A stretch of DNA of 64,000 bases, taken from assembly GCF_040938485.1 (NCBI RefSeq), contig NW_027271439.1:806001-870000 (forward strand), in the 5' to 3' direction. The position numbers and the translations under genes were made by a program. This DNA is from Diadema antillarum (taxonomy: Eukaryota). A model generated the notes under the pieces. The model worked only from the letters and a program-made list of their open reading frames with translations, ran no database searches and was not told the DNA's origin. Below are positions 14,621 to 57,564 of this stretch, piece after piece (the first letter of the stretch is position 1; every line of letters begins with the position of its first letter).

Positions 14621-14925
14621 CTCTTAGAAGACACTGCTTGTCCTTAAAGCTTCCAAACTCACTCTGCTATATAAACAAAGAGTATGCACTCTCTTGGGGT
14701 GAGGGTGCTCTATGCAAATTAGCTTGGGTGTTCTATGCAAATTAGGGTACTGAACAGAGCATGCATCATTTTGGGGTTTTGGGATTGTTGCAATATTTTG
14801 GGGGTGCCACTGTCTACCTATTGAGGGATAGTGTTGTCAATAGTATACTTCTTATGCCGCTACACACTGTATCAACTATAAAACAGAGCATGTATTCTTA
14901 GACTTTCCCTACTTTTTTGCTAGTT

Positions 14926-16310: not shown

Positions 16311-16314
16311 AGTT

Positions 16315-16733: not shown

Positions 16734-18050
16734 GGTGCTTGTTGAGAGACTCATCCTTATACTGGGCACTGCAGTCAAATACTACCCTCAGTTTATTCGG
16801 TTGTTGTACACCATGGTGGGGGATGTACCATCTAGACTTCTCATAGAGTGTAGGATTTGGAATGAACTCAGCATAGTCATTGGCAATAAGAGAATCAATG
16901 ACCTTCGTATACTCAGCATGGTATACGACATCTCTGGAAAACTTCCTTCTCAGACTCTCTAGTCTCTTTTCAGCCTGGAGCTGATTGTTGGGCAATTCCA
17001 GATCATCCATCTTGGATAGTAATGGCATTTCATATTGACCTGTCTCTGTGACGTGAATGCCTTCTCCCATAACCTTCAAGAACTTCTTGTCATTTTGTGA
17101 GTATGGCTTTTCATGACTGTCTGGGAGAAAGTCTGCTTCCATGACCTTAATTACCCTTGAGGGGATAATTTCTTCCTTCACAGTCACTCTCTCAGAGAAA
17201 AGGACTCCTTTCCTTTCCGTTCTTAGGTTGACAGGAACTTCGCTGACCATCAAACGGTGACTGATGCCAAAACGGTCTTCACTTCTCCTTTCATAGTCAC
17301 GTTGCACAGTACCTACTATGCTCCATCCAAGGTCTGTCTTGATGCCATATGGACCATCATCATGTGGGCTTGGAATGACATCATGAGGCATCAAAGCTGT
17401 AGCACAATCGTACCCAATCAAGAGTCCAATTTTGCAATCTTGCATCGGAAGAAGATACTGACTAAGCTTATGAAGATGGGGTATGGATTCAGCCATTTCA
17501 CAAGTAGGTATGTGTCCTCTGTTCGCAGGCATGATGTCTCTTGTATAAGTGGGTGGTAGACTTATCCTCTTCTCACCATCATGTGCTCTTACAAAGAGAC
17601 CATCTATACGCTCACTTGGGATCCGTTCATCTCTGCTCGACATTGTAGAAAAACGAAGATTCACATCTACTCCTCGCAATCCCAAGTCATTCTTTGTAGA
17701 CTCCAGTATGAATGTGGTGTCGGATTGGGTATCTAAGAGAGCATAGATCAACCTTTCCTCTGTCGAACTTCTCCTTCGTAAGTCTCAGTTTGTCATCTCT
17801 AAGACTGCTAAGCGAGACAGCAGGATCACAAGCAATGGTCGATTCTTCGTCTATGAACTTGGAAAAGACGTGAAAGGGCGGGAATCTACCTTGATCCTTC
17901 CTCCAGCTCACGACACATCTTGCCCATCTGTTGATCAACCATTCAGGCAACTTGGTTGCATATCAATTACAACAAATCTCTCTCTGCGTTTTCTCAAAGT
18001 AACTTGCCAGTATGCCTGTGCTTCGTGCAACTGGCTCCTTTGACCAGATT
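16734..18050 (-). mobile_element. BEL/Pao element 2, gag-protease-RT N-terminal fragment
   Basis: KLPEWLINRW (gag), YALLDTQSDTTFI (protease), IGLLIGYDC..AL.P, GPYGIKTDLGWSIVG, WYIPHHGV..PNKLRVVFDCSA (RT N-terminus). Confidence 0.9.
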
Positions 18051-36212: not shown

Positions 36213-37507
36213 GTCTAATTCTTCCTCATCTTCTCTTCCCTTTCTGCTTCTTCTGCTACTATACTCGAACTTTCTGCTTCTCGTCTGCATCTTTCTCATG
36301 TATTTTATTTCATTTTATTAGAGCTGTTCTGCTGGCGGTCCTATGGAAGTCCATTTCTTCTTGTTTTATTTTAATGGTTCAAAATTATGGTGACGGTAAT
36401 GATGAAAGTGACGATGATGAATATGATAGTGATATCTACAAAACTATTTACGTCAGTTTTAATCACAGTTTAATATTGGTCAGTTTAGTCACAGTCAAAG
36501 CGGAGGATCGCTACGACTTGGATTTTAGTTGTGATGAACACGATGAAGCAGCACTTTTTATACAATCTATTATATTTTGATAACATGGCTGTGACTGACA
36601 GATTACGTAATATATGGCTTGCCTTAAAGTGACTGTGATATCAAATTCAACCGCTTTTATCAATAGAACGCATGAATATGTGTGTATTATTGTGTCTCTA
36701 CTTTGTTCCATAAGTTCTTTTATATAAGGTATAATTTATTTGACAAAAACACGAACAAAAAGAATTCACACCCTCATCACATACACGACTCAAGTGCTTC
36801 ATTGAATACATCGCAGTGATATTAGTCCTCTTTTTTATTTCCTATACAAGTCAGACATGTGCAACTAATTGGGGGAAACCGACGGACACATTACGTATAA
36901 AAAAGTGACGAAACAACGAAATGTATGCAGGTACCGTACGTGTGTAAACCTATAGCTGTTGAGGTCTCTATTGTCGCGTCATGAACATTTCTTCATCAAG
37001 CATAAGGCTCCTGTATGTGTTTCTTCTAATAGGTATCTTGCAACGTATGGACTATGTGTGCGCATAACACTCAAACACATCCTAAGCACACATGTACACG
37101 CACATATACTCACACAATGTAATTATGAACATAAGCTGAATCTAGAGCTTTCAGAATGAGCATATAGATTTCTGGCATTGAAAGAAACAAAGAGTTGCAC
37201 GATGGGGCACAATAAGACGCCAAACAGAGAAGCGCGTTTTAATGGTTTACGTTTATTTGACATTGTACTCCCAAACAAATCGTTTTGCTGTGTGAATATT
37301 TACCGTGATCATGTGGTGGTACAGGAAAACAAGACAAGAAACATTTACTTTAAAAAAAAACCAGATTGGAAATGTGCCAGTCAAGTCAGCAAATAACAAT
37401 TCCAAAATATCGTATATTTCATTAAAATGTTGAAAATGGCTTCTAAGATTTTATGTTTGGTGGACTGGAGTCTTCTCCATCTCTGTTATGTATACTTCAT
37501 ACACCAG

Positions 37508-37668
37508 GGCCCCATTTCATAAAGAGTTTATTTGATGACAACTCTTTGCTGGAATGACTATATTGTCATGGTAACGACAAGAATACAGCTTCCTGATTGG
37601 CTGTTTGCTGTGGAAAGTTGTCATTCCAGCAAGAGTTGTCACCCTAACATCTTTTATGAAATGGGGCC
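37508..37668. mobile_element. PIF/Harbinger-like MITE with CAG target-site duplication
   Basis: CAG-GGCCCCATTTCATAAA...TTTATGAAATGGGGCC-CAG. Confidence 0.75.
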
Positions 37669-37940
37669 CAGCTGTCATAATTATGTTTTGAAGTATAAAC
37701 ATCACTCAATCATTTCACCCCATAGAAATTACATATCTACATACGTAACCTTCACATTTTGAAGTTTTATTCTCAGAATAAAGAGGGCAGGAAAAAAAAA
37801 CGCACTAACGGTTCCTTTACCAGTTGTTTACCACGTAATGAGGCGCACCTTACATGCATCACACACCCCTAGAATGACTGAAAATTAATTGTACACTACA
37901 CTATCAATTCTAGCTCGTATCCGATTCGGTGGTCGATCTC

Positions 37941-39847
37941 CTACGGCTCGTAGGTGAGGACATGAACGCTCCCGTCGGAGTAGCACGGAATGACCACCTC
38001 AACGTTGCCATCGCCGTCGAGATCATGAACGGTTGGCGCACCCACGGTTCCATCCGTAGCCTCGAATATGGACCTCTTCGTGTAGCTCCAGTTGTTGGTG
38101 TCGGAGTCGTTCTCCGATTCGAACACGTAGATGTTGCTGTCGTCGTCACCGGTTAGCATTATCAGGGGCTTGTTCCTGAACAAAACACCATTTGAAGCAA
38201 AGTAGATTAGCATCTAACAACACCAGAAATGATTATTTTACAAAATGATAATAAAAAGGATGATAAGAAAGCATTCCTTTCTCCCTTCACTTTTCTCCTC
38301 TCTCTTTCTTCCTCATTACTACCGTTATCAGTGGTTACAAAAGTTTGACTTTGGTATATAATCTTGAAAATACCATGACATGAATATCTCCCATCATGTG
38401 CATCTCTGACTTAAGTATTTCTTTAATTGGACTAATGATCGGAAAGTTATTGTCAGAAAAGATTCCATGGTTATGGACGTTAAAATGCGACGGCAACACA
38501 ACAGCAACACAACAGAAGACAGAAGTAAACACAAGGATACAACAACCGGCAGATTAAAATGTGTACAGAAACAGTTGCGTAGCAACCTGAGGAAATTAGG
38601 CTTACTTGAAAAGAGACAAAGCGAGACCAAAGCGATGATAACCTCGTGATATTGGGAAATAGTAGCGATGAGTTAATGGGAAATGTATCGATTAGGGACT
38701 TTCAAAGGGTTTCCAATGGATATAATTCTGCTTAGACGTCACATTTCTATGACAAAATTTGCTCTCAGCCCATGAGATGCAAGAGTTTCAGTAGCTAATA
38801 ACAACTATCTGAACTTGTTATTGATAACGACTTTCATGAAACGGGTCCTGAAGGCCTCTCCAAGACTGACCTGTACGTCCCGTCTGGCTGGAAGGTGAAA
38901 GTGGTTCCGGGTGAACCCATACCCTCAGTCACGACCAGACCAGGGGGCTTGAAACCTTCAGCGATCAGGTGTCGAGTCCACGTGCCAGTCGCCCAGTTAT
39001 CGGGGATTTCAAACACGACCAGTTGACCATTTGATTTACTGTGGAAATGAAGTATTTTATATTACAAGGAGTAGAGAGGACACTGAACGGATGTGTTCAA
39101 TATACATAGTGAGAGGAAATTCTGCGGGGAATGTTGATTTAAAGGCAACAATTGTATATAAGATCAATTAAATAATTACACAAAAATGGCTAAACATGAA
39201 AGGAATTAGATGGAATAACGGTATATCACGTTTCTGTATGTTAGTGCACATTTTAGTTTTTACAGGAATTTTAAAGTAAAAGATGAATTGGTATCGTGAT
39301 TGCGACTTTGTATATACGTTAAACTCCACAACACCCTCTTCCTGATATATTTGATATGATTTGCTTCGTATTCCCGACTGTTGCCTTTATTTCAAAGTAT
39401 ATACTATCCTACATTGTAGCTATAGATCAGATTATTTTTATTTCATTCTTGTTTAAAAGCGATCATTCTAAACACCTGTTGATGGAGACTAGGAGGTCCT
39501 TTCTGCCGTCTCCGTTGATATCAACGTACTGAAATACAGGAAATGATAACGAACAATAAACAAGGGTCATAATTTGATTACTAGTATACGCAACAATGGA
39601 ACATGATCATAATACTATATACTTCAAACAAAGGCATAAGTACAAGACACTTTCAACCCGTTCATACGAACTTTTCTGACGGCAATTTATCTTTGCATTC
39701 AACGTCAGCGATGGTATTAGAATTGATATAATTTTGTATACATTGAATACAGATGTGGGTGACTCATTATTTCTATACAAATATATTAGAAGCTGGTATA
39801 CTACTGTATACAAGTCTCAAAATGATCACATAATATACAAATAACAT

Positions 39848-39884
<37 letters not shown>

Positions 39885-40231
39885 CACACACACATACACA
39901 CACACAAAGGAAAATGTTTGAAAACCAAGAAGTAATCTATCATTAGAACAAGAATGTAGGCCCCATATTTATTCCGACCCATGTAATCACCATGACAATC
40001 TACATCATCCTAAACTTAAACTGAAACTATCTATGTATTAAGTTCAATGTCAGAGGAGAATTTTGGTTTACCTCACAGTCGAAATATCGATTATCGGCAA
40101 TCGCCTCAATAGTACGGTGGTTCAAGTTCTTGAAATTTGGCTGATCTGCAAAAAATGAAAAAAAAAATCGATTGTTTTGTTGTTATCAAGAAAAAAATAA
40201 ATCCTGTGCAAATGCACTGATATTCGATAAG

Positions 40232-40264
<33 letters not shown>

Positions 40265-43200
40265 GTATTTTCCCTGGCTTTCTAATACTGAATTTTGTCA
40301 TCAAAGTTTATGTCGATAAGTCAAACACTGTAATGTATATAGACGTAATGATGTAACGATATTACAGAAAAATGATTGCGAAGATAAACGCTTTACTTTC
40401 TCGCACTGATTGTTTCAAAAATGAATTCTGATGATTTCTGCCACCGGTATCAACATCATCATCATTGTCACCATCAGATGAATATTGAAAGAGATATTTT
40501 AAACTATCTGATTGATTAGATAAACGAATAATTATTTAATCAGCAATCAATATATTAAATTTGTCGCAATTTAAACAGTACAGTACAACCGAAAAAATAC
40601 CCTAATAGTACTTTAAAACACGATAGCAAGATGGAGAATTCTTTAGAGCAAAAATTCGTCAATATACCTACCGTCGTCGGACCAGGAGGCGACCAGTTTC
40701 TCGGCAAAGTACTGCGTGCTGAAGATGGCCGTACGAGTGACCCACGGCGACATCGGTATCTCCTCGTAACGGAAAAGGGCATCGGGACCCTCGAAGAGCG
40801 TGTCAACATCCCATGTGGTGGAGATGGGATTCATCCGTGGCTGACTGAAGTACACCATCTCTGCCAATGTCGTTGAGGCGGATGCTAAAGATTCAGGAAA
40901 GGAGGGAGTGGGCGGGGGATGATAACGGGATGGTAATCATGGGTTCCTGTTATTACTGCATGTCACTGAGAAACAGGTGGGTGTAATGAATTATATTTGT
41001 AGCCTCATTCTGAACATTATCTTATCAAGAGCAATAACGATGTCGATGGAAAAGTGAACAAATTGGAAAGATTAAGGTTGCTTAAAGTTATAAAGGGGGA
41101 AGTAAAATCTGAACTCATAAGCAATGATGAGACTTATACATCGACTCAGTATCATCAGGGTTCTTGTGGCGGTAAACAGCCACGCTTTCAACGACCAACG
41201 AATCAGTTTTAATGCTCCATTAAGTGATGATTAAATCACTTTCCATTAACATAAGAATATTGCTAAATAGCGGTGTTACTAACAACCGTTGAGTACACAG
41301 AAATGCCGCAAGTCGTTCGCAAAGTTTTGTCATGTATGTAAAATGCAATATCTATATCGGATTGCCCTTGTCTACATCGGTCCTATAACTATGTTAAAAC
41401 CACGAACTCTTTTTGTTTTCAATACAGTATTTCTCCACCGGACTTTCCCTGCATTTTCCCCGAGTTCATAACGAAGGATATTACCCACATGTATCGGCTC
41501 TGGCGGTGAGCATGTCTTTTCGTCCGTCACCATCGACATCGACGAAGTAGACACGATGATACCACCAGTGCTCCGTGACAGACCCAGTGGTCAGGTCGTG
41601 GTAGGGAGCCGGGTGGGCTGTGTGGAGAAAGCAACAACTGGAGTGGTCATCTTCACTTGCAAACACTCTCTTCTCCTGTCGAACAAGATTCACTCACAAA
41701 TGAAATTTACTGCATTTCTTAAAAAGTGATGATTATACTTCATCATGTACAAGCTGATACATGTACATGATACACAATGTGGACAGGTTAATTCTGTGCT
41801 ACATGCTGATGTTTGATGAATAAGCTGTAGAGCTGAAATTGAAGTCAAATGACTCGCAATATCATCAACATGACCAAGGAATATCACATATAACAGATCG
41901 TATGTCATTTTCATTGTATTTTTGTGATGCGTTATACTTGGTGATTGAATATCATATCTAAAAGGCGAAGCTGCATGTCGTCATAAACCGTATTGAACTG
42001 TTGAATATGAACATACACACACACCATATCTCTCTACTTTCTCAGACACAAATATGTAATACTCTATAATATCATATTTGAGTGAACATGGTTGTCACAT
42101 TGCCAGACCCATTCTTTTTAGGTTTCTGTTTAACATCATATTTGTAAAGAGAAATTGTCTAAGTTGTCAAAAGATATTACAATTCGAAAGTGACACCCCT
42201 CTGGTTCAACGCAGGCTCTAAACAATCAGATTTCATAGACATTTATAGATCATTCACAATTTGAATGAACACATACAATGGTTTTTCGTTCGCCGCTGTT
42301 CAGTTCACTGTATGACTATACCCATGTGGCTTCGTTTGTCTGGGTTGATTTCATTTCTGTCTTTTTTGCTCTAATGAGAGTACATGTACTGTACTAAATT
42401 TTTCAGATATGATATGAAATGCAAAATCATAATATTGGAATGTCTTTTCAAAGGCATTAATATATTGTTTACTCCTGCCTGTCATAAAGTTTGAATGGTG
42501 CTCCAAATCAAATAACACCCCCCCCCCAAAAAAAATAGTTTATACATTATAATTAATAGTAAGTTCAAACACATACAAACATGAATACAATTTATGTATA
42601 GAAAAAATGCACTGTCGAGTCCAGACAACATATTTTTTCTACTTCTCATTTACTCTTAGCTATAAGTTTATAGTTGTACAGACCCTGCTGGAAAGAACAC
42701 AGTGTCACACAGTGTGAGAAACACAGTGTGAAGACAATGTGAACACATTACAGTGTGAAATCCCTTCACACTGTTAAATTGGAGCGTTTTAACAGTGTGA
42801 ACACATTGTGAATCATTAATTCACAGTGTGACACAGAACATTAACATGTGAGCTCTCTGTGAAAACCTAAGCACAGTGTGAAATCATCTCTAAACTGTTA
42901 AATTCGAGCGTTTTTACATAGACGACTGTGTGACCACACTGTGACCACACTGTGGGACACTGTGTTCTTTCCAGTAGGAAATAGATTGAACAGAAAATGA
43001 CACTCACACGAACTGTCTGCTTCAATCACACCAATACTTCCTGCTGTTTTGCCGGGGACCAAAAATCCGTTGGCCACCCACCAATACCGATCGGTGCCGA
43101 ATACATCTTCTGTATAATGAGAAAGGGAAAGCAAGGTGGTTTCGACAAGTCCGTTCCCCCTAAAATAAGGTCAATAGTATAGTTCAGAGTGGGATTGAAA

Positions 43201-43945
43201 GAAAAGCAACTAACCAGGAAAGAAGAACTTGAGGCAGAAAGACGTATTGTTAGTATAGTCCTTTGTGGTTAAGGGAATTTTTTATGAATATGAAAACTCC
43301 TTAGTGAGTACGGAACGAAAAACGTGGGCATGTCTCAATACAAATCATTACAATCATGACAATAGTGACATCAGCTGTCTCTAATATTTGGTCATGTAGA
43401 GGAAATACAAATCACACAAACAAGCAAAATCTATCTTTCTTTCATCAAAATAAAAAGCAACAATTCCTCTCGCGATCTCTGTTGGTCAGCTCGTCACATC
43501 TAAGGTCATGATTGATTATTTCGCATATCATTTTTGCACTCCACTCCGTTTCTGTCTATTTTTCTCCTTTTCTTTTAATACTTCCTCCTCTCTCCCTACA
43601 TGATGAGATGTTGATAAAGTCGTCCATACCTGGAACAGGTTCCACTTCGTTAGGCCACAGAAGACCATCAGCCAAGGTCTGTCGGGCTGAGTTCAGGTTA
43701 CTACGGCCCAGCTTGCTGCCGATGTCCCTGATCACGTACACTTCGTCCGTAGACAAGGGGTTGGCATTGAAGGTGCTCACGGTCAGGTCCAGCTGGTCAG
43801 GATTGTTGGGATTCTCGTGGATGGCCGAGAAGGCTGCATCATCCGCGTCGAATGAGGTTATTTCAACGTAACTATCTCCCCGGGCCGCCCCGTTGAGGGC
43901 AAGCAAGACGAGGCCCTGCGCAACAAGAAGTAAGATTCTCTCCAT
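37941..43945 (-). CDS. Secreted FG-GAP/VCBS-like (DxDGDG) repeat protein, paralog A; 8 exons, 429 aa; predicted beta-propeller
   Basis: Exons 43945-43630, 43109-43008, 41617-41489, 40884-40672, 40145-40072, 39528-39476, 39038-38871 and 38175-37941 (1290 nt, GT-AG, phases 1,1,1,1,0,2,2). Signal-peptide-like MERILLLVAQGLVLLALNGAARG; motifs DVDGDGRKD, DINGDGRKD, DLDGDGNVE; colinear with paralog B. Confidence 0.9.
39853..39905. repeat. (CA)n microsatellite
   Basis: Direct reading; a (GT)n tract also lies at ~40235-40262. Confidence 0.95.
42683..42978. mobile_element. MITE with CCCTGCTGGAAAGAACACAGTG termini and internal CACAGTGTG repeats
   Basis: CCCTGCTGGAAAGAACACAGTGTC...GACACTGTGTTCTTTCCAGTAGG; ends 30 bp from the exon-2 donor of paralog A. 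Confidence 0.7.
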
Positions 43946-45373
43946 TTTGAGTCGGGAGATGTGTCGAAGACGGTATCTCGGTGAAAATGAGAGGAGTTGT
44001 TATCTGTATCGAGTATAGATATCACAGACACAGGAAAATATGTGTCGTTCTTCGCCAGAAGGGCGTGTTCCCAAGCAAAGCTTGTCGGTCGTCATCAGTA
44101 GAAGACTGGATGCACGTAATACATGGTGCTGTACAGAAAGTAACTACAAAGGTCATTAATTTACCACGAGTCTGCCACCTGAAAACTTGCTGTCTATACA
44201 AAGTGATTCTCCCTCTTGATTCAAGATGATTCGTCTATCATCATCAAACGGAGCGTAAACCGTAATACACCCATACATACACGTACCTATGACACACCCC
44301 ACACACATTCATTTTCTAACATTGATTTTTACATTTTGAAGTCCGCCTGTATAGTTCAATGAAATTTCGTCAGATTTATCAAGATTGGCGCCAGTGAGTA
44401 CCAGAGTGACTAACCTCATTGGTTGATAAACAGGCACAGAAAAATATGAAGAGGATGCAGGTATGAATGAAAGCATTATGCATTATCATTTATACGATAG
44501 GAAAAGACAACAAAAATTCAGATCAAATGATATCAAATCAACCCAAGTATAGGGGCATGAGCATTGCAAGCGAATGTGAAATAATTGCATTCTAGGTCTT
44601 CTATACTTGTGCTCACAGCCGGAGCACGAATTTTAGGCAAGGTTCACACAATATTGTATTTTTGTTTTTTCTAACGACTATAAACCAATAAATCAGCGTA
44701 CCATTTGCAAATTACTGCATGTTCCCCTAACCCTCCTTCCCCTCAAAAAAGCCCATAACAACAAACAACCAAAAAACGAACTTACTAAACAAAACACTAA
44801 ATGAATTGATTTTTCAACCACTTAAAGACATCTTGGCAATTTCTGCAACAGAATTTGCGTATATAGTGGAGAAATACATGTACATAATGGAGGGAAAGTC
44901 TCACAATCCTCATTCACCTTTGGATGTTTGGACAACATTGAATTCTCTCATGTCCCAATGTTAACATGTAAGAGAGAGAGAGAGAGGGGGGGGGGGGGGG
45001 ATAACTTTTACCAAAGGCTTAATACGGCGGCCTTACAGAGAGCAAAAAGTGGCAATGGACACATTAACTTCCAGCCCCCTCATTCGTTTTAACTAGGGTG
45101 TGGGATTTAAAACCAACTCTGGGAATGAGGTGGATGCTTTGTCTGAGAAATATGCTTCATCTCCGACGGCGTTTAAATTCTTAGATCATAATACAGCAGT
45201 CTTTTTCATGATTCTCACCTGCCGTTACATATAATAGTATGACTCCAGTGTTTTCAAAAATTGCTCTCACGTGCTTGTAAATGAGATGTCGGTAAACAAC
45301 GGATGTTGAGTAATTTCTTTCCATAATCGTAAGCGGATTACTGGCTAATGCTCTTAATGTCAGCCATGAGATG

Positions 45374-45383
45374 TATATATAAA
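45374..45383 (+). promoter_or_regulatory. Candidate TATA box of paralog B
   Basis: TATATATAAA about 120 bp upstream of ATG 45501, with an Inr-like TCATATAC ~25-30 bp downstream. Confidence 0.5.
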
Positions 45384-45500
45384 GCCCTCAGCACTTGCCT
45401 GAATCATATACTTTTGGCCCTTGACACCAGCAACTCAAGTTGACCACATCTGCAATATAAGAAGAGGGCAAATAATTGAAATACATAAATTTCTGTAAAA

Positions 45501-48500
45501 ATGATTCGTTGGTTGGTATTATTAGTCTTTTATCCAGCCGCCATGGCTTGGACGGTGCGGAATCTCGGGCACATTGACATCCCTTTCGCTGCCTTCACCT
45601 CCGTTCTTCCCGACCCCAACACGGGAGTGGACACCGTCTCCATCAGCACATTCAACCCCGTGCCAGGCACCAAGGATAACATCTACATCGTGCGCGACGT
45701 TGGGCGACAACTCGCCGACAACGGTGCGAACGCCCTGGTGACCGAGGTCCTCGCGGACGGCATGGTGTGGCCAAACGAGGTCGAAGAGATTCCCGGTAAA
45801 TCTTAATCAATTTTGGTGATAATTATTATAACAATGACAATTGTGATTTTCTTTACCAATTAAGAGTAGCCTCTTCAGTGTTAAAGGTCCAGTTTACCTT
45901 TGGGAGCAGTGATTTTAGAAATGTTCAAGATATCACATTTGATGCATGATGTGTAAGTCTGTTTTATCACAAAACATCCTACCATATAAAATTTTCGCAA
46001 TAAAGCCTAAAATATAAGGAGATATCATTATTTTTCTCAATAAACCGTAATTGTAGACGGTTTAGTCTGGAAGCATTCTTATTATAACTATTGTTCACAT
46101 TTTGTGTATTTAACAATACTTAACATCGATTATACGGATTCAAATTTTTACATTGGTTGTTTCTATCTCTAACTCACATTTTAGAACTATTTTAAAGCAC
46201 TAATGCTGGGGTTTTGTTTCATCTGCAAATGGTAAATTATGCCTTTAAGCAAAGTTGTTCTCCCAATGGGCCCAATAAATAAAAATGATATATATGTATA
46301 TATATATATATATATCACCCCAGCATTACAAGGTAACACGTTTTGTTCAAGAGGGACATTAGACATCTAAGCACAGTGCGTGGTTCGAACTCCAAACAGC
46401 AGACTGGAAGTATAGCGCCTTATCCACTGTACCACAGTGTAGTAGCCTTTTATGTTGAAGGGGAAATGCGTCTTAAAAGCGACAGTCTGAATACAGCAGT
46501 ACTTGTATTTAATTTTGGATAAATTTCAAGGAAACCTGAATGGGAGTATCCCCATATATTCCAAACTAAGCTTTGATTTACAAAAGGCGAAGCTGCAGAA
46601 TGAAGTACCCCACCCCGACTGAGACGGGTGGTCTAAACTTTAAAACTGATGAAAATGCCTACGGGTAACACTGGTAACATCAATGAAAAGTTCCCGACAA
46701 CAAGAAACTTAAGAAAGTTTCAATGATAGTAAATTGACACAGACACGTAAATACAACCCTGCTCGCCCCAGCGTTATTTCTCTAATATTTAGCTTGTCAA
46801 ACAACAACGACAACATGATGTTGTAGAAAATGTGTTTTTTTTTTTAATGCCTTCACTCAAGGAATATTTACTTCACCTAAGCAATGTATTCAAGAACATG
46901 AATTTTTGCTTACACAATGTCATGTCACAGCAACCCCGTAGCGAAATGCTACATTGGAGAAAATTCATGTGTCAAAATAGTAGGCTTTCTTTAACAACTA
47001 CGCACCTGCTTCAAACAATGGTAAAAGTTACAGACAAAAATTGCCTTAACTCTGTTTAGAGCACGGTACAGCAGCAAGTACTGGTCCTGTCAGGATAAAG
47101 TATTTAATGCTAGGACAAAATGGTGTCAAATATTTTTTTTTCAAGAATAGTTATCAGACAAGTTTATATGCTTCTGCGTATATTTTACATTTTTGTGAAT
47201 TTTTGATGTTATTGTCTTTTCTTTACAAAATTACTTCAGATTCAAAACACTGTATCGGGCCTGCACTTCGATTTGAACCATTATTTAAGTGAGAGAAGTG
47301 TGCATTATAAGTATAGAAAAAGCTATGTAGGTTATTCCTAAGTCTGCGGTATCTTAGCCTTTTCAAAACCAATTTTTCATCTAGTGAACTTCGAATTTCT
47401 CTTAGAAATTAATACCTGTTCTCTAAATGATATTTCATCAGTGGTTTCTTATTTCACAAACAGTTAAAATCTGAATTTCCACTCTCGTGATTAACTATGC
47501 ACGCGACTGATATGCCAATGTATGGTATTATGCAAGTTAATGACGTGTATATACTGTGACATCCAAGAACAATACTTATGATCAATGTCTTCAGGTATAT
47601 AGCCCCATCCATCATCAATAGAATATGGTGCCGGATACATGGCGATGTGTAATCTAATCACAAGGCCAAATTAAAATAATGCACTGTACCAGGCAAGGAA
47701 TTATCCTCGGACTAATATTTGAGAAAATTTACACCTGTCCGTTCCAATTGTCTTATCTTGTCAATTGATAAATTCAGTCTTATCGGATATAACAAACACA
47801 ACTCACATGTGGTGACACTGGGATACTGGTACACAATAATGTAGGCGTGTCGACACATCATGTCGTTTTATCGTACGAGATACAGCGACTCCGCAAAGAC
47901 CCTCTTGAGCCAGTAACCAATGGTTTGAAGCGGGATGCAATTGTGGGATTTGCGCATGTCTGTTTCTCTCGTACTCGAATCACCCGAGTTTGATGAAGTT
48001 TTAATTGGTAGCTGATTAAGGTGACCGTGTAAGTGATGGGGGGGGGGGGCAGAAGAAAAAATAGAAAGAAGGGAAGAGGGACAGAAGGAGGGAGAAAGGG
48101 AGTGATGAAGGAATACTGATGGATATGTTATTCGGCGGGAGCAAGGCACACACGAGTTTACACTCAGGGATCTGTAATCGCATTAATGTATTTTGCTGTA
48201 CCATGTTTTTGACCTTTTGCAACACGTGATTCCACTAGATATGAAAAGCACATTATTTGTAGGATATGAAAACATAATCATACTTAGCTGTCTGAAATGC
48301 TAATCATAATCAACTTTATAAAAGAGCAATGAAATAAACTCTTGCTTTTCAGAACAATTTCACTCAAACAACTCTTTAATACAAAGACATAGAACAGACT
48401 AGAGGAATAGCTCTTATAGGTGAGCCTTCAATCTTTACATGAATCATATTACTCTACCTTATTCTTTCGAGGCATAAACTGGATGGCATCCAGAACTCAC

Positions 48501-51500
48501 GTACCCCTAGCCTTAGACTCTCTTAATGGACGTAAATTCCTTTTTCACTCAGACGACGTGTTTGGTCGCCATGGTCTGTGGTGGGTTGCCAATGGGTTCC
48601 TGGTCCCGACCAAAACGGACGGCAACATCGAGATCATCGAAGCAGGGAATGACACTTCCAGTGAGTATACACAGTCAAGATAAACACTATTTACTTTAAA
48701 CGTTCGCCATCAACCTGCAGTCAGTTTCTGGAAGAATCTGATGCGGTATTCAAAGTCGTATGTTTGGGGTTCTCTCTTCCCCCGGCAGGCTTCACGTCTT
48801 TCCACATTACCCCTCCCCACACACTAGCGTAATAATTATAACGCCATTTTGAGTTTATTCCCATTTTTACTGATGTACCGAAAAGGAGATCACCAAATTG
48901 GTAACGTTTTTATTGGCACCGTCCCGTAGTGCACTGGGATGTTTGAATCTTAATACTCTTTTTACGTTAATTGCGCTAATAGAACTGTCAGGTATAATAC
49001 ATTTGTAATGACTAAAATCAATACATTCGCTCACATGTAGTCATCCTTTTGTCTGAAATTTTCACAAAGTCGCACCGGCCACCACCTATGACATCACTAC
49101 TCGAGTCCTCGACAGATCCAAATGGTTCTACCATCGAGTTTACTTCGTCGACATGGACAAAGACGGCCTCAAGGACGCCCTCACGTGTCGTGCATACGTA
49201 CCAGTAGGTAAGTTAATATGCGACCGGAGAGTTCTCGAAAATGACATTTTTAATTATTACTATGTATTGAGCAATGATGCACACTTTTCTGCATCAAGTT
49301 AGAATAGCAGTCAAAGTGTAACGGGTATTTGAGGACCCAAATTTGTGAGGTGCAATATTTTGATTATATTTTGTAAGTTACATAAATATATATCATTATC
49401 AAAGCAGAAACTTGTAATCCAGTCCCAATGTAGATTCGCCATGATTTATGCAGATTTGATTACCACATTAAGAATAAACACACTTTAGTAATATCTGCCT
49501 CTGATATGAGATGATTATTCATTGACGCAGTTTAAAGGAAAGTGTATGAAATGAAAATTCAATATCCCTATGCTGCTGGATTATAACTCTTTGTTTGCCA
49601 TGTAATGGAGTAAACAATTTACCCCTGTGATTTGAGAAAAGATTCCACACAATGACCATACGCTGAAGGATAGTACGTCCTGTAATGTGGCTATTTAATG
49701 GTTAGGTAGACTAAGCGGTCTTGTAACTGCGATAGATATACCTTCCCGACATTTGCGATTCGTTATATTCGTTATGAAATATATCACAGATTATCATTAT
49801 TTTTCATGCCTATTATTCGAAAGTTGTCTTAATAAGCCTTTAGTCTTCTCAATTATAACGATTTTTTTCTCATCTTGAGTAATAATATTTCATTACAAAC
49901 ATATAGGTCTATATTGTATCAATCTAGCAAATCAATAATGAATCATAACGCCAAAGAGAGGAGCGGCGCATATGACACCTGTCCCTTCAGGACCTGCTAA
50001 TGACTCTTTTTGAATGTTTTTAAGTGCTGACTGGCACAGGAAATGACACAGCGTACCTCTACACACTGGCCAATAGTCCTGTGACTGTGTGTGCCTATAT
50101 TTCTGCTCGAGGCCTGTCGTGATGTTCTGTCAATGGATCTCTTACTGAAGTATGAAAAATGCATTGATATATCACTGAATCTATATTATTGAATTAACGT
50201 CGATATCTTTCTTTCTTTCCACCTAAAGTGGGAGAGGTACAGGCTGAGATGGTCTGGTTCAAGCATCCACCAGTCGGCAACCCGCTCGCCCTGCCCTGGA
50301 AGGAGAACGTCATGTTCACAGGTCCCGATGCCTTCTTCCGCTACGAAGAGCTGCCACTGCCACGCTCTATCGGCCAGAAGCGGTATGCCATCTTCAGCAC
50401 ACAGTACTTCTCAGAACAGATCGTTGTGTCATGGACAGAAGGTATGTCACTTGAAAGATGGGTTTATATTATCATGATCATAGTTGCTTTATCAGAAATT
50501 CGTCACGTCAAATGCGTGCAATCTCGATGCATTGGGCAGTATTTTTGGGGTGGTATTATGACTATAGTTATTGGGATGGTATTATAATAAAGTTAAAAAA
50601 TAATCTAATATAAATAATAACAGTATAATACATTTGTATGTCATAAAACAATACAATATAGTATGTAACATTATATTATACCATGCAAGTAAATTATATG
50701 TAAAATGATGTATAGCATGGTATAATATAAAATGCATCGTTCATAATAATCATTGACACCACACACAACTGCAACCTTCTATGCATGTAATCTCATCCCG
50801 TTCTTGACTATTCTTCAAGGACTCTCCCCTGATTGGTCTAAAATAAAGCACAGGATTATTGACTACGTTCCTGAGGAAAGGTTCTTTGAATGTGAGGTAA
50901 GAGGAAACAATCTAAGGCTGCGTTTATCTAAAAATTTTCTGAGGCAGAATCACGATCCTAAACGCATTTGAGGCATTTTCAGGGGTTAGATAAACGCAAC
51001 CGTGGTTTCAAACGCGTTTAGGAACGCCGTTTTGAAACGCCTCTCAAAGGGCGTTTTGAAACGCGTTTGAGACCACGATCGCTGTTCTGTGAGTAGATAA
51101 ACGCAATGCCGTTTTGAAACGCGTTTATATCTCAAGGTCAAATCCCAGCTGTTTCCGGTTGTGCTCTCTGCCCATTATTTGTGTGTGACTGATGAGGCAG
51201 GTTTGGTGGTATGAAGTTGACCTTTACTTCCCGGGTCAGACGCCGCAAAGCAGCTGCGCAGTGACACCACTGGAATCGCGATTGTAATGGTTAGATAAAC
51301 GCGGCTCCTCGAGAATCGCGTTTCAAACCACGTTTACAAACACCGTTGCAAACGCGTTTGGAAACGTGATTCTCTCTCTCAAGTTAGATAAACGCAGCCT
51401 TAGACGCATGTAATACTGAGTACCGGCTATGAAATTAATTAGCTAAGTAATAAGTTATTTAAACTAAAACAATACGTATAAATATCTAACAGGTCAGGCA

Positions 51501-53428
51501 AGTGTTAAATTCTAAAACATTTGAACAGTTTGAGTCGGATATGAATCGAATTAATACACGATATCATTAATTGTGATTAGTGTCATTCATATAACTTGAA
51601 TAAACAAATGTACTGATGCGTTCAAACTGATTGCTGTTCCTGTGTAGATCAAACCTCGTAATTTGGTTAATCTTTCTCATGATTAGCCAGTCGCAATGTA
51701 AGGCAAGCCTCGCGTAAACATTCAAGTCATTATTGTATTTTGTCTTTTGAAATCAATATTTCAGATTGTGGATTTAAACGGAGACGGACGCCTAGATATT
51801 CTGGTAACAGCGAATAGGTAAGCATAATTATAATAAACTTTTAACTTTCTAGATAACTACTTATAGTGTGATAAGAATGATTAAAGTACTGCTCTATTCC
51901 GCAATACCTGTTCATTACTTAAACAATATCAGTTACTACTTTTGAAACTGTTTAGAAACAAAGCAATATCGCACACACCATTACTTTTCCCGCTTATAAG
52001 TAAGGCCCAGCAAGCTTATAATCACATTTGAATTAAAAAAAAATCATGCCCAAGCTTATATTCTTTGAATTAAAAAACAGTATGTCAAGCACAACTATCG
52101 GCCATTTCTTTTAAAACTGATTCGTGGGACAGAACAAGTGTTGTGATTTTGTGCAAATTGATAAATGAAACAAAACGTCTAGAATGAGAAGAAAGAGTAT
52201 TTAACGACGTACTTTAGAAGCTTATCTTATAAATACATGTTTTTCTATCAATCAGTGAAACAAATGGTAAACTGCTTGCTTATGAAATCCCTGACGACTG
52301 GGAAACCGGGATCTGGGTGCGTCACGTGATTGCCGAGGGTTTCAAGCCTAACAGTCCAATCACGTTCGAGGGAATGGGTGCACCGGGAGTGGCTTTTACT
52401 ATCAACCCTGACAACAACAGGAACAGGTATGAATTGAGATCACGACAGTAGACACGCGTGTGCTATTATGAGGGTGTGTGCCGTGTTTTGTAAATTTTGA
52501 TAGAGTGCACTTTAAGGTGAATTCTGGCAAACGCAATTGTTACTTCATATTGAACCTTTATTCAAAATGAAGCCAGTCTGTCGGTTCGTCTTCTCCTGCG
52601 TGTATTACTTTGCATAGGCCTACGTCTATTTATTGCATTTATTACGCGCAGAATATGTTTTTCGTTTCATAACATCCATGGATAGTTTAATCCAGAAAGA
52701 CGGTTGAAAATAATGGTAGTAAAGGTCCGAATATTGTTTAACAACAAAATAACTGTCTAACAGAATACCAGTACAACTTTTGTATTCTAAATTCCTTCAT
52801 TATGACACACAGTTAAACTGAATTTCGAAAAGCGAATTTCAGCTCGCGCTAAAAATCATTTTGAATCTAGGCTTAAACTGATTGATCGATAGGTTAAAAA
52901 AGTGTGTATACATGTATGTCATAGATAGATGATGCCATTTCATTGAGACTACCTTGCCCATCCAGAGGATGAATATCTTTGAACTATGATTGCATGCACG
53001 AGAGATTGTGCATGAAATAGCTGACATGCAAACACTGATGATGGAAAGAAAATTTCGGCAAGGCATTGTCAGATTGTGTACGTGATCTCGTCAAGTTGTA
53101 GGCCTACTTCTAAATAGCGCGAACCCATGACTGTATGTTTTTGGTGACTCTCTGCTATCAACATTCTTAACATATTGAATCATTTGACTTCAGACGGAAG
53201 CCTATGATCACCATGGCTGGGGATGACGACAGTAATCTGTACATCTTCGAGGCCCTCAATGATGACGATCCAACGGATTGGCAGTACGCCAAGACATCAA
53301 TATTCGAAGCCGAACACGGCACCGTTGGCTCCCCTTCCGTGCGTGACGTCACAGGAGATGGTCAGGCGGAATTTTTCGTCCCAGCTTACACAGATGGACA
53401 ACTACATGTCTTGACCTTTGAACCTTAA
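45501..53428 (+). CDS. Secreted FG-GAP/VCBS-like (DxDGDG) repeat protein, paralog B; 8 exons, 429 aa; predicted beta-propeller
   Basis: Exons 45501-45795, 48553-48660, 49070-49207, 50229-50441, 50820-50896, 51765-51817, 52256-52426 and 53194-53428 (1290 nt, GT-AG, phases 1,1,1,1,0,2,2). Signal-peptide-like MIRWLVLLVFYPAAMA; motifs DMDKDGLKD, DLNGDGRLD, DVTGDGQAE. Confidence 0.9.
45885..46244. mobile_element. Kolobok-like MITE
   Basis: TTAA-AGGTCCAGTTTACC...GGTAAATTATGCCT-TTAA. Confidence 0.7.
50915..51400. mobile_element. TA-flanked MITE with AGGCTGCGTT termini
   Basis: TA-AGGCTGCGTTTATCTA...TAGATAAACGCAGCCT-TA; internal TAGATAAACGC and AAACGCGTTT repeats; begins 19 bp after the exon-5 donor of paralog B. 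Confidence 0.8.
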
Positions 53429-54041
53429 AGTTATACCTTATGCTCTGACTCATCGTATTGTGTTACTTGATATTCTCTTCGTGGAGCTCAAATTGATTAC
53501 TCAGGATAAAGATATGAGATTTGATAAGTTCATTCCATTATTAGCTTGTTTATGGGTTCATATGGATCATTTGAGCACAGCGGTCAAAAACACATTCTAT
53601 CCTTTTTTGTATTCACTATTGTTGTTGTTATTTTTCATCACTAAAATTTAATTGAAAGTATTACAATCATTGTAATTACAAGATGAATTCATATTTAATC
53701 GACAAAGTGTCCAAGAAATGTTTTTCGTAAAGAATCTTTATGAAGTAAAGATGCCTACAAACGCCATCATTCTATTGATTTCACAGTCATTCTTAAATGC
53801 ATCTACTAAAAGTGGTTTCATGACATTTGCTCCTGCGATAATTGCTGCCATGAAACATCTGCACGCTAAGCCAAACATAAAGTCTACCCACAAATATAAC
53901 CGTGGGTAATCCTGGAATCCTCACATTAACTACACCTAAAACCCTCACAACCCTAACCCTAGATTCCTTGGAGAAAATAAGACGAGAGTAAATGTCGTGT
54001 CACATTAAAAAGTATCTAATCATGTTAATCAGGCTACTCTA

Positions 54042-54775: not shown

Positions 54776-55258
54776 GTTGCGTTTGTCAGCATCGCCCTCG
54801 CATTTTAAACTTCACTTGATGTACACGGCTAATCTGCATTTGAATGTGAAGATGTGAGAGGTTCAGCTGTTCGTAAAAAGCACAGAGTTGTTCCTATTGA
54901 TGTGTGGGGTTGTTGTCTGTCAGTTGGTATGTCAGGCATTCGTTTCAAAGGGGTGTAAACACTGTATCCTCTTTAGTTCATTGTGCTGAAATTTTTTTAG
55001 GTGTCAACAACTGCAATTCGACTTCATTATGTCAGGGAATGTGTAAATAAAAGGTTCTTCTCGGGGTCCACACGTTAGGCCGCTGTGCTTGCCAATTCTA
55101 CTTCAAGTACACGTATTTAATGTGTGGATGATGATTTATCGTTGAGTTTCGTTACGTTTAACACTTCCATGCTCCCTCTGGGTCCAGCCGTGAAAGGGCA
55201 TTTCGCTCATGGTTTTCTGTGATTTCAATCTTTGGTTTTTGTTACTACTTGACAACAA

Positions 55259-57564
55259 ATGTCTGCCGACGAGAGCCAAGCGAACACCACGGACCTGTCT
55301 GATGTCGTTCAACCAATAATTGCAAACATTTTACGTAATACAACAAAAAGTGAACAGACTACTCTTCCCAACTTGTCAGATGTCATGCCAATCTCTACAC
55401 TAAATTCTGCTGTTACAAACGACAACGACCCCGACGCAGGATCGAGATCGAGTAACACTACAAGAAGAGGTGATGATACCGTGGCTGTTACCAAAACCGG
55501 CCCAATCGACGGAGACATCAACATCGCTCACGTTTGGGCGTTGTGGGGTGTCGTCATCGCAGCAGGTCTTCTGGTTGTCGTCATCGTTCTCATCATGACG
55601 TGCCGGTGCGTCATCTACGTCCAGAAATCGAAGAACGAGACGAAAAAGCCTCGAAGAAGGCTGCCAAGAATCAGTAGAAAATCGCCCAAGTTGCAGTTAA
55701 GGTCTACCGGAGTAATGGCCGACCACAGGGAAGCGAGGAAAGACTTTTTCCACAGCCTGGAACGAGGGAACGCCCAGGCCCGGCGACAGGAGGCGACACA
55801 GAGGTGGTTGCGTAGCAACCTGGCCACGTCGCTTCAGTACATGGAAGGATCGGGCAGCGGTGGTCAGCCGGCTTCCTACACGGAGCAGGAATGCATCCCT
55901 ATGTACGAAACCTCCTTTCGACATGGAGAGTTAGACCGTATTCCAAAAAACAAAGAAACCAGAAAAGAATATTCGTTTACGCGCACACCTCTAAACCAAA
56001 ATGGACAACGGATAGAACGCCCGATTATTCACCATCAACAAAGCGACAACGTCAACGGTTTCGTTCGCGTCATCCCAATGGCATGTAACTTGATCCGTGA
56101 TCAAAACGCGAATATTTCGTTTTCGCCGACGACTCGTGTACAACCACAACATCAGCCGACGCGTCCTCGCTGGCACACGACCGTTCGTCCCGTCACCTTC
56201 TCCCATCTCGTCCATCCAGGAACACGCGCCGTCTTCTCCGAGCCGCCAAGATACGCAGCCAGTCGACTACCAATGCGCCGGCACCATCGGCCGACAGGAG
56301 GCGATACCGGAGCACGGGGATTTCGCCCACCTGCAAGTACCGGAAAGCGATGGCGACCTACGAAACAAACGCTGCCAAAGTTCAATTTGGCCGGTGAGGT
56401 CATTCTTACGTCATCGGAACCAAGTTTGGTAGGAGTTCCAAGGACTGGGCATAACATCTCACCAAGGTGGGACGACTGGAGTTATGAAAACACGGTGTTT
56501 GAGGTAGGAGAACAATTTCGTATAAGCAAGGTTGATGACGATGTTGTTGGTGGCGATTTTGTCAACTTTCGTGATAATTAATTACAAAGATTAACGACCA
56601 TCATAATCTAATATTTGTTTTCTTGATCATCTGTGTTATCATTATCTACTGTTATAATACTAATATCACTTTAAAGTTCACAGGGAAGAGTAACATTTCC
56701 AAATACTGATCGAAGAAAAGTACAGCAATTCAAATGTAGCTGTAGTAAAGATGTGTCGTTTATGATTAGTCACGTGATTGCTTGCACTCCATACAACGAG
56801 CATTAAAACAGGGGACTTTTGCATTTACTTACGGCAAGGTAAAATAGATCGACGAATTATTCTCGGAAGATGCATTTATTGTAGTTGTTGATGTGAAGGG
56901 CATGAACACAAGCTAGAAAACATCTAAATCATTACATAAGATTAGCAAATGAAACGCGCCTTAGTTAAAATCAGAGCACCTAAAAAAGAAGCAGGGGCGG
57001 ATACAGAAATTCCGTAAAGGGGGCGCACGCCCCTATTTTTTATTATTTCTTTTGTTTTAACAAAAAGATAAAGAGGGGCGCAAGCCCGGTGCGCCACCCC
57101 CCCCCCCCCCCCCCCCTCCCGGATTCGCCACTGTAGAAGAGATAGCTTGAACATAGTATCAGAACAGTATAAGAAAAAAGAGAAAAATACCCGCGGTTTG
57201 TGGTAACACAGCCTAACATGATTCACTAGCGTATTTTGTCTGACTGAAAGGTAAAATATGGAAATAACAGTGTGTTTTGCTCTTCATCCTGCTCCAGCCA
57301 AACACACCAAGGCTCATGGTGCCCACAAACTCACCCGAGACTGATCAATCGTCATCCCGCTCGCTGGACAGCCTCAACGGAGTGAGTGCCGGCGCCAGTC
57401 AATGTAACGTGTCGTCAGATGGTAGTCTAACCGTTACCGTGGGAACCAGCAAACGAACGTCCTACGAGTGGGATTTTTATGACCCGACCTATCAGAGTAG
57501 ACCCGTCAGGTTCATGAACGGGGCATACGTGCCAGTTATTGGCAGCACACAGTACTGGGTCTAA
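55259..57564 (+). CDS. Orphan single-pass membrane protein; either a 440-aa single ORF (55259-56581) or a 503-aa spliced form (55259-56503 + 57298-57564) ending TQYWV
   Basis: 1.3-kb GC-elevated ORF with an S/T-rich N-terminus carrying N-x-T/S sites, a hydrophobic segment WALWGVVIAAGLLVVVIVLIM, juxtamembrane CRC and a basic stretch. An in-phase donor GAG|GTAGGA (56503) and a polypyrimidine-CAG acceptor (57297) join it to an 88-aa terminal exon. Confidence 0.75.
56992..57133. mobile_element. Short MITE (CAGGGGCGGAT...ATTCGCCACTG) in the putative intron of the membrane protein gene
   Basis: Inverted termini and a poly-C tract. Confidence 0.65.

What the first reader, a model, noticed from the sequence alone, without database searches (positions are those of the whole stretch)
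37941..53428. Head-to-head pair of uncharacterised secreted calcium-blade beta-propeller genes
Seen: two divergently transcribed genes with 8 exons each, the same intron positions and phases (1,1,1,1,0,2,2), and the same CDS length (1290 nt, 429 aa) despite compensating exon-length differences. Each has a signal peptide, no TM segment and three DxDGDG-like motifs. Long conserved blocks include LADG..WPNEVE, WWVANGFLVP.KT.G, YHRVYFVD, GPDA.FRYEE.P, AIFSTQYF, EIPD.W.TG.W.RH.IAEGFKP, GDDDSN.Y and HVLT.EP*. Established: DxDxDG loops in FG-GAP/VCBS blades bind Ca2+ in integrin alpha propellers and in free propeller lectins such as fungal PVL. Inference: an old inverted duplication retained under selection, encoding stand-alone secreted propellers with aromatic-rich conserved patches (possible glycan-binding, innate-immune or matrix/biomineralisation proteins), perhaps acting as a co-expressed pair. 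I cannot name a characterised ortholog.
Basis: partly seen in the sequence, partly recalled or inferred. Interest (0 to 1): 0.7.

Follow-up and report, generated by a model that had tools for sequence, protein, structure and literature searches.

The report
Paired secreted seven-blade propeller genes
Two neighbouring, oppositely oriented sea-urchin (Diadema antillarum) genes encode old, well-conserved secreted seven-bladed calcium-loop beta-propeller proteins of a family that many marine animals keep, jawed vertebrates seem to lack, and nobody appears to have studied.

Summary
Window 37941-43945 (-) and 45501-53428 (+) carry two divergent 8-exon genes. Both have intron phases 1,1,1,1,0,2,2 and 1290-nt CDSs, and the proteins are 50% identical. 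Each has an N-terminal signal-like segment, no other hydrophobic segment and three DxDxDG-type loops.

My models match the RefSeq proteins of Diadema setosum in length. RefSeq models for this genome (D. antillarum) differ by 14 N-terminal residues in B and by 2 residues at one donor in A.

Models of the D. setosum orthologues, used as stand-ins, are confident seven-bladed propellers (pLDDT 92). The nearest solved structure is the aldos-2-ulose dehydratase propeller (Z about 30, 12% identity). Pfam gives only FG-GAP/FG-GAP_3.

Both genes are under strong purifying selection (dN/dS 0.10 and 0.045 against D. setosum). The A/B split predates the Diadema-Lytechinus-Strongylocentrotus divergence, and the head-to-head layout is kept in all three genera. 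Introns are shared with amphioxus, lamprey and a bivalve, so the family is old and vertically inherited in bilaterians.

I found no characterised member and no paper, and function is inferred only. No RNA run was listed, so expression is untested.

The scan met this family before on another piece of the same genome. This is an unstudied subfamily of a known superfamily.

The parts
37941..43945 (-). Gene A, 8 exons, 429 codons: 43945-43630, 43109-43008, 41617-41489, 40884-40672, 40145-40072, 39528-39476, 39038-38871, 38175-37941 (stop included)
   Evidence: The model is the same length as D. setosum XP_072172998.1 (P0029) with 12 substitutions. RefSeq XP_071500272.1 of this genome lacks Y351-R352 because it uses another donor.
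45501..53428 (+). Gene B, 8 exons, 429 codons: 45501-45795, 48553-48660, 49070-49207, 50229-50441, 50820-50896, 51765-51817, 52256-52426, 53194-53428 (stop included)
   Evidence: The model is the same length as D. setosum XP_072173367.1 (P0001) with 5 substitutions. RefSeq XP_071500255.1 of this genome starts at Met15, window 45543.
43946..45500 (.). 1555-bp ATG-to-ATG spacer between the divergent genes; a candidate shared (bidirectional) promoter region
   Evidence: About 80% identical with indels to the 1942-bp spacer of D. setosum. No detectable similarity to the L. pictus spacer. Promoter activity was not tested.
43870..43945 (-). Signal-peptide-like N-terminus of A (about 23-25 residues)
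   Evidence: 19-residue Kyte-Doolittle window of 1.8 at residues 3-22. Modelled as a lone N-terminal helix in the orthologue P0029. Signal-like N-termini occur across the family. The cleavage site was not predicted with a dedicated tool.
45501..45551 (+). Signal-peptide-like N-terminus of B (about 17 residues)
   Evidence: It depends on use of the upstream ATG at 45501.
41519..41536 (-). A, Ca-loop 1 (DVDGDG, residues 166-171), exon 3
   Evidence: Motif position; coordinates computed from the exon model. It lies between two strands of the third blade in the orthologue model.
39499..39516 (-). A, Ca-loop 2 (DINGDG, residues 281-286), exon 6
   Evidence: Best FG-GAP Pfam stretch in the family.
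38003..38020 (-). A, Ca-loop 3 (DLDGDG, residues 403-408), exon 8
53348..53365 (+). B, Ca-loop 3 (DVTGDG, residues 403-408), exon 8. B loops 1 (DMDKDG, residues 162-167) and 2 (DLNGDG, residues 280-285) lie in exons 3 and 6.

Best explanation
Shown: these are two intact paralogous genes of Diadema antillarum, each encoding a roughly 410-residue mature protein that is a single seven-bladed FG-GAP/VCBS beta-propeller behind a signal-like N-terminus. Three blades carry DxDxDG hairpin loops of the calcium-binding type. The pair arose by an inverted duplication before the living euechinoid lineages split. It has been kept head-to-head and under strong purifying selection. The family itself is old in bilaterians, as shown by shared introns.

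Inferred: calcium in the three hairpin loops stiffens one face of the propeller, as it does in integrin alpha subunits. The opposite face carries blade-specific, family-wide conserved polar residues. In gene B numbering these are the WPN motif at 90-92, K119, Y155-H156, R175, the GPD motif at 212-214, P338-G339 and G361-D362. I read these as one asymmetric pocket that binds, and possibly converts, one defined small extracellular ligand, most plausibly a sugar or sugar derivative.

A and B keep 47 and 50 of the 50 most conserved family positions. I therefore take them as two isoforms with the same core chemistry that differ in specificity or in place and time of expression, not as one working copy plus a decaying one.
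For: - Gene models and paralogy.
- Fold: P0001 model pLDDT 92.4, pTM 0.90; P0029 model 92.3, 0.89; 28 strands, which is 7 blades of 4.
- Structural neighbours: aldos-2-ulose dehydratase propeller Z 29.8-30.3 with 375 residues aligned, about 3 Z units above generic seven-blade propellers; Foldseek E 1.7e-10.
- Pfam: FG-GAP_3 at 43-45 bits and FG-GAP at 28-35 bits, both above cut-off.
- Secretion signal seen across the family, with few and unconserved cysteines.
- Selection: dN/dS 0.09-0.11 (A) and 0.04-0.05 (B) at dS 0.12-0.15. The B orthologue in Lytechinus is 80% identical.
- Single-site argument: conserved motifs are blade-specific. Only two of 21 blade pairs score above the highest shuffled control. 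Only three loci exist per genome.
- Conserved positions kept in both copies.
- Age and layout.
- Shared introns with amphioxus, lamprey and Dreissena.
Against: - No ligand, metal or activity was tested.
- The top/bottom face assignment comes from strand order and the integrin convention, not from coordinates, which the tools do not return. Conservation is not concentrated on one face (15 top-loop versus 17 bottom-loop positions at 85% or more).
- The structural lead of the dehydratase over unrelated WD40-type propellers is small, and sequence identity is 12%.
- There is no match to Pfam AUDH_beta_propeller even at E 10.
- No RNA run was listed, so expression of either copy in this species is unconfirmed.
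- The RefSeq model of B on this contig lacks the signal peptide.
Confidence: 0.5

Rival explanations
1. They are protein-binding modules. The propeller serves as an extracellular docking platform for another protein, as integrin alpha heads, the LGI1 EPTP domain and ITFG2 do. A and B may work as a heteromer made from a shared bidirectional promoter.
For: LGI1 EPTP, ITFG2 and integrin alpha propellers are the next structural matches (Z 26-27.6; Foldseek). The head-to-head layout has been kept in three genera across a long span of urchin evolution. Both copies are retained under selection.
Against: The holothurian and sea-star genes examined have no adjacent paralogue. Amphioxus, lamprey and Dreissena showed no paralogue in the flanks fetched, so the family works without a partner copy next to it. 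No non-coding conservation was detected in the spacer beyond the genus. No complex prediction could be run.
Confidence: 0.25
2. They are multivalent calcium-dependent lectins or pattern-recognition proteins of innate immunity, like fungal PVL or tachylectins.
For: The proteins are secreted FG-GAP/VCBS propellers with DxDxDG loops, and the superfamily includes PVL and tachylectin (PMC8023676). The family is found mainly in marine invertebrates.
Against: The blades are not repeats of one another, and the conserved motifs occur once per protein. That argues against several equivalent sugar sites. There are only three loci in the genome, with very slow protein evolution, unlike the fast-evolving, expanded families typical of immune recognition (general knowledge, not tested here). 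PVL is not among the 50 best structural matches.
Confidence: 0.15
3. One of the two copies is a decaying or silent duplicate.
For: A has accumulated 12 substitutions against D. setosum, versus 5 in B. A has changed 3 of the 50 most conserved family positions. No expression data were available.
Against: Both reading frames and all splice sites are intact. dN/dS for A is about 0.1. A orthologues are intact in D. setosum, Lytechinus and Strongylocentrotus. The three changes are conservative (W to Y, D to N, F to I).
Confidence: 0.03

Closest known systems
N-terminal beta-propeller of aldos-2-ulose dehydratase/isomerase (Phanerochaete chrysosporium, PDB 4A7K/4A7Y/4A7Z)
   Same: It is a seven-bladed VCBS-type propeller of nearly the same size (chain residues 15-434). 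It is the best structural match: Z 29.8-30.3, 375 residues aligned, rmsd 3.6.
   Different: Sequence identity is 12%, and there is no match to Pfam AUDH_beta_propeller PF22301. The fungal enzyme also has cupin and lectin-like domains that are absent here, and by my recollection it is not a secreted animal protein. Conservation of its catalytic metal site could not be tested.
Integrin alpha-subunit head propeller (FG-GAP repeats)
   Same: It is a seven-bladed propeller with DxDxDG calcium hairpins. The only sequence matches to solved structures run through these loops (integrin alpha-IIb, E 8e-5).
   Different: Here there are no thigh or calf domains, no TM segment and no evidence of a beta-subunit partner. 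Only three blades carry calcium loops. The protein is 429 aa and soluble.
Fungal PVL lectin / tachylectin-type propeller lectins
   Same: They are stand-alone secreted propellers of the same VCBS supercluster (PMC8023676) and carry a calcium loop motif.
   Different: Those lectins have near-identical blades with a sugar site per blade (recalled from the literature). Here the blades are barely similar and the motifs are blade-specific. PVL is not among the top structural matches.
Stand-alone bacterial FG-GAP/VCBS propellers of 400-430 aa (Planctomycetota, Bdellovibrionota, Actinomycetota and others)
   Same: They share the size and predicted fold (TM 0.72-0.75; feature score 0.92-0.98). One metagenomic relative (P0044, 29% identity over 95% of the length) lies on a contig with bacterial-type gene content.
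   Different: They are also uncharacterised. Many carry PF22301, which the animal family does not. Scanning the genome collection with profile A5, built from the microbial-type relatives (P0044 first), found only partial matches of 23-33% identity through the loop region.
ITFG2 (KICSTOR subunit)
   Same: It is a single FG-GAP propeller of similar length and a good structural match (Z 26).
   Different: ITFG2 is cytosolic and has no signal peptide. Pfam Itfg2 scores only 13-15 bits against a cut-off of 27.

Membership tests
FG-GAP / VCBS beta-propeller superfamily (Pfam PF01839, PF13517) | Profile score above the Pfam gathering cut-off | tested here: met
   P0001: FG-GAP_3 43.3 bits (cut-off 26.9) and FG-GAP 34.8 bits (22.1). 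P0029: 44.9 and 27.6 bits. Single window exons fall just below the cut-off.
FG-GAP / VCBS beta-propeller superfamily (Pfam PF01839, PF13517) | DxDxDG-type calcium loop in a beta-hairpin of the blade | tested here: met
   Three loops per protein, each between consecutive strands of blades 3, 5 and 7 in the models. Metal binding itself was not tested.
FG-GAP / VCBS beta-propeller superfamily (Pfam PF01839, PF13517) | Seven-bladed propeller fold | tested here: met
   Predicted models have 28 strands, pLDDT 92 and pTM 0.9. All top structural matches are seven-bladed propellers.
AUDH_beta_propeller (Pfam PF22301) | Match to the family profile | tested here: not met
   No match for P0001, P0029 or P0044 even at E up to 10.
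AUDH_beta_propeller (Pfam PF22301) | Catalytic metal site of the dehydratase propeller conserved | not testable with these tools
   No residue-level structural alignment or coordinates are returned, and the paper describing the structure is not held.
Integrin alpha subunit | Propeller followed by thigh/calf domains and a TM anchor | tested here: not met
   The protein ends with the propeller at residue 429, and there is no hydrophobic segment after the signal peptide.
PVL / tachylectin-type multivalent propeller lectins | Blades are close sequence repeats with equivalent binding sites | tested here: not met
   Blade-to-blade local scores are 17-41, against shuffled controls of 21 +/- 5 with a maximum of 36. 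The conserved motifs occur once per protein.
PliI lysozyme inhibitor (Pfam PF16743) | Full-length match to the 123-position profile | tested here: not met
   P0029 sums to 35.9 bits (cut-off 27), but over three stretches, the best of which covers only profile positions 59-88 and overlies a DxDxDG loop. P0001 scores 13.5 bits. I read this as motif overlap, not a PliI domain.
ITFG2 (Pfam PF15907) | Profile score above cut-off; cytosolic protein | tested here: not met
   13-15 bits against a cut-off of 27. A signal-like N-terminus is present.

The most novel reading that the evidence does not exclude
The family is an unrecognised ancient bilaterian extracellular enzyme (or high-specificity sugar-derivative binder) built on an AUDH-like propeller. 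It is kept by marine deposit, filter and algal feeders and by lampreys, and lost in jawed vertebrates. In echinoids it is duplicated into a head-to-head pair whose two products act together from one bidirectional control region.
Probability: 0.12. Interest if true: 0.65.

Novelty: new member of a known kind. Interest (0 to 1): 0.35.

Why it matters
It defines a clean, small and strongly conserved family of secreted propellers with no known function. The family has 1-3 genes per genome in the echinoderm genomes examined, and members were also found in hemichordates, amphioxus, tunicates, lampreys and bivalves. It was not seen in jawed vertebrates in these searches.

A functional assay on one member would annotate all of them. 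The conserved divergent pair in sea urchins offers a natural test of whether gene order is kept for shared regulation.

As it stands, this is a correct annotation of two ordinary-looking genes of unknown function, not a new kind of system.

Tried and rejected
- RNA evidence: the look-up of sequencing runs listed no run for window 42950-48700, so read laying could not be used and expression stays untested.
- Papers: searches for the locus and protein identifiers of the urchin, sea-cucumber, sea-star, Ciona and lamprey genes, and for VCBS with bivalve, echinoderm or sea urchin, found nothing relevant. One broad query returned only unrelated papers. The dehydratase structure paper is not held, and a search for its zinc site found only a cupin paper.
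- Bacterial genomes: an 11-sequence profile was too diverse to scan with. The 5-sequence profile hit only generic calcium-loop segments in bacterial and archaeal MAGs, so the organism behind the bacterial-type relative P0044 was not identified.
- Distribution: a second profile search of the large protein collection added no new named taxa. Absence from arthropods, nematodes, cnidarians and jawed vertebrates is only 'not seen'.
- Spacer: no conservation beyond the genus.
- Paralogue dN/dS: synonymous sites between A and B are saturated.
- HGT into urchins was considered and rejected, because introns are shared across phyla.
- PliI membership was rejected as motif overlap.
- Joined spliced proteins of the window were not handed to any search or folding tool. 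Exons were searched by reference. The D. setosum orthologues P0001 and P0029 (98.8% and 97.2% identical) stood in for B and A. Joined CDSs were used only inside scripts, for identity, dN/dS and the tree.
Full report
**What is there**

Comparing all stop-free frames of the two strands in 37500-54000 gave eight colinear pairs of similar peptides. Choosing GT-AG sites that keep the frames gave two complete models.

- Gene A, minus strand: 43945-43630, 43109-43008, 41617-41489, 40884-40672, 40145-40072, 39528-39476, 39038-38871, 38175-37941.
- Gene B, plus strand: 45501-45795, 48553-48660, 49070-49207, 50229-50441, 50820-50896, 51765-51817, 52256-52426, 53194-53428.

The start codons are 1555 bp apart and point away from each other.

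The proteins are 49.9% identical over 421 aligned positions. Each has a hydrophobic N-terminus and no later hydrophobic segment.

**Whose genome, and independent gene models**

A profile of exon 4 searched against 1.84 billion representative proteins returned only 25 hits. The best, P0001, is a 429-aa 'uncharacterized protein' of Diadema setosum.

P0001 and its paralogue P0029 are the same length as my B and A and differ by 5 and 12 residues, without gaps. Translating the D. setosum locus (L013) with my exon boundaries reproduces both RefSeq proteins exactly.

Cluster members on contigs of 884,933 and 2,434,914 bp are named Diadema antillarum. The second length equals that of contig C111 of the window's genome, so the window is D. 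antillarum.

RefSeq models for this contig differ slightly from mine.
- B starts at Met15, which removes the signal peptide.
- A lacks Y351-R352 through a donor 6 nt upstream.

Signal-like N-termini are found across the family, so I keep the upstream ATG. Only RNA data can settle these two points.

**Copies in the genome**

Exon 8 finds six places: the window pair, a colinear copy on C111, and a third paralogue on C32 and C348.
- The C111 copy is 92-98% identical to the window, with indels. I read it as the other haplotype.
- The third gene (C32:522431-536418, minus strand) is intact and has one extra intron.

**Fold**

I did not hand the joined window proteins to any tool. Exons were searched by reference, and the D. 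setosum orthologues stood in for the whole proteins.

Single exons score just under the Pfam cut-offs for FG-GAP_3. The full-length proteins pass for FG-GAP_3 and FG-GAP, and nothing else convincing appears.

AlphaFold2 with a 34-sequence family alignment gave confident models.
- P0001: pLDDT 92.4, pTM 0.90.
- P0029: pLDDT 92.3, pTM 0.89.

Each model has 28 strands, which is seven four-stranded blades, with the N-terminal strand closing the last blade.

The best solved match is the N-terminal propeller of fungal aldos-2-ulose dehydratase: Foldseek E 1.7e-10, Z 29.8-30.3, 375 residues aligned, 12% identity. This is about three Z units above LGI1 EPTP, integrin alpha, ITFG2 and generic WD40-type propellers.

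By sequence, the only solved relatives are integrin alpha-IIb and CRTAC1, and only through the calcium loops. The family does not match Pfam AUDH_beta_propeller even at E 10.

P0029's above-cut-off PliI score comes from several partial stretches. The best covers only profile positions 59-88, over a calcium loop. I do not take it as membership.

**Selection and age**

Against D. setosum:

| Gene | dN | dS | dN/dS |
|---|---|---|---|
| A | 0.012-0.013 | 0.12-0.14 | 0.09-0.11 |
| B | 0.006 | 0.13-0.15 | 0.04-0.05 |

Between A and B, synonymous sites are saturated. The B orthologue of Lytechinus pictus is 80% identical.

In a maximum-likelihood tree of 35 family members (the joined window proteins were used inside the script only):
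- A groups with D. setosum A, S. purpuratus LOC100889205 and L. pictus LOC129271434 (100/100).
- B groups with D. setosum B and L. pictus LOC129271437 (100/99).
- Holothurian genes join each clade only weakly (84/77 and 88/78).
- The third paralogue groups with L. pictus LOC129271964.
- All echinoderm genes form one clade (98/99).

The duplication is therefore at least as old as the split between diadematoid and camarodont urchins.

The head-to-head layout is present in D. setosum, L. pictus and S. purpuratus. It is absent around the Apostichopus and Patiria genes I examined. The spacer shows no similarity beyond the genus.

**Range and origin of the family**

Named members come from echinoids, holothurians, a sea star, two hemichordates, amphioxus, tunicates, a lamprey and bivalves. 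An Atlas cluster of 173 mostly molluscan proteins matches with TM 0.88. There are also protist transcriptomes (Euglena mutabilis, a colponemid) and unnamed metagenome or Logan contigs.

One full-length relative (P0044, 29% identity) lies on a contig with bacterial-type gene content. More distant bacterial VCBS proteins follow.

No member carries a functional name, and I saw none from jawed vertebrates, arthropods, nematodes or cnidarians. That is 'not seen', not proof of absence.

Exact splice mapping shows shared introns.
- The urchin genes share their first and last introns, in position and phase, with the bivalve Dreissena. A third intron probably matches too.
- The amphioxus gene matches the urchin introns exactly at four or five positions, and the lamprey gene at three or four plus two near matches.

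The family was therefore already an intron-bearing gene in early bilaterians. Recent transfer into urchins is excluded.

**How it most likely works**

Shown:
- a secretion-type N-terminus;
- one propeller and no other domain;
- three calcium-type hairpins in blades 3, 5 and 7;
- strong constraint on both copies.

Inferred:
- Family-wide conserved residues are blade-specific: WPN at the start of blade 2, K119, Y155-H156, R175, GPD before blade 4, PG before blade 6 and GD after strand 6B.
- The blades are barely similar to one another.
- The family stays at one to three genes per genome.

This pattern fits one asymmetric site with a conserved job better than a multivalent immune lectin. With the dehydratase propeller as nearest structure, I favour a single pocket that binds, and perhaps converts, a sugar-like ligand. 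I put this at about 0.5, with binding and catalysis roughly equally likely within it.

The rivals are a protein-docking role, possibly as an A-B pair (0.25), a PVL-like lectin (0.15) and decay of one copy (0.03).

B keeps all 50 and A keeps 47 of the 50 most conserved positions, and A's changes are conservative.

The face assignment rests on strand order, not coordinates. Conservation is not limited to one face, so this step is weak.

**Not done**

No RNA run was listed. No complex prediction is available. The dehydratase active-site comparison needs coordinates.

**Verdict**

The observation and the core interpretation are right. The genes are already in RefSeq as uncharacterised proteins, and the scan has met the family on another piece of this genome. 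This is an unstudied subfamily of a known superfamily, of moderate interest.

Noticed in passing
G000:C111:1905000-1930000 (L008, L009) versus window 35794-56605: A second, colinear copy of the whole A-B locus, 92-98% identical with indels and with near-identical exons. It is most likely the alternative haplotype left uncollapsed in the assembly, and it has its own RefSeq models (431 and 439 aa).
   Followed up: partly
G000:C32:522431-536418 (minus; L010, L011), also C348:315759-315983: A third intact paralogue (RefSeq 440 aa, 43% identical to B). It has an extra intron splitting the exon that corresponds to exon 4, and is orthologous to L. pictus LOC129271964.
   Followed up: partly
window 45501-45543 and 38871-38877: RefSeq models for this contig start gene B at the second Met, losing the signal peptide, and use a donor 6 nt upstream in gene A. 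The D. setosum RefSeq models agree with the longer forms.
   Followed up: partly
window 30897-31286 (-): An exon of an ArsA/GET3-type ATPase (Pfam ArsA_ATPase, E 4e-22). The same gene lies downstream of gene A in D. setosum (L013).
   Followed up: partly
window about 8400-17800 (-): Long open frames, including a Pao/BEL retrotransposon peptidase (10054-10521, E 1.3e-29), in the G+C-richer stretch. This is probably an LTR retrotransposon insertion.
   Followed up: no
window 55253-56578 (+): A 442-aa stop-free frame just downstream of gene B, in a G+C-richer stretch, with no Pfam match.
   Followed up: no
window about 39800-40300: (CA)n/(TG)n microsatellite runs in the gene A introns on either side of exon 5, seen as CVCV.. 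and THTH.. frames in the ORF list.
   Followed up: no
L049 (Branchiostoma belcheri, P0017): The amphioxus RefSeq protein has an odd hydrophobic stretch in place of the second calcium loop, and a shifted fifth intron. This looks like a local mis-prediction.
   Followed up: no
P0044 contig: A 413-aa full-length relative (29% identity) sits among bacterial-type genes (holB-like, thymidylate kinase, PSP1, Peptidase_M15). Some 'protist' members of that clade may therefore be bacterial sequences in transcriptomes.
   Followed up: partly
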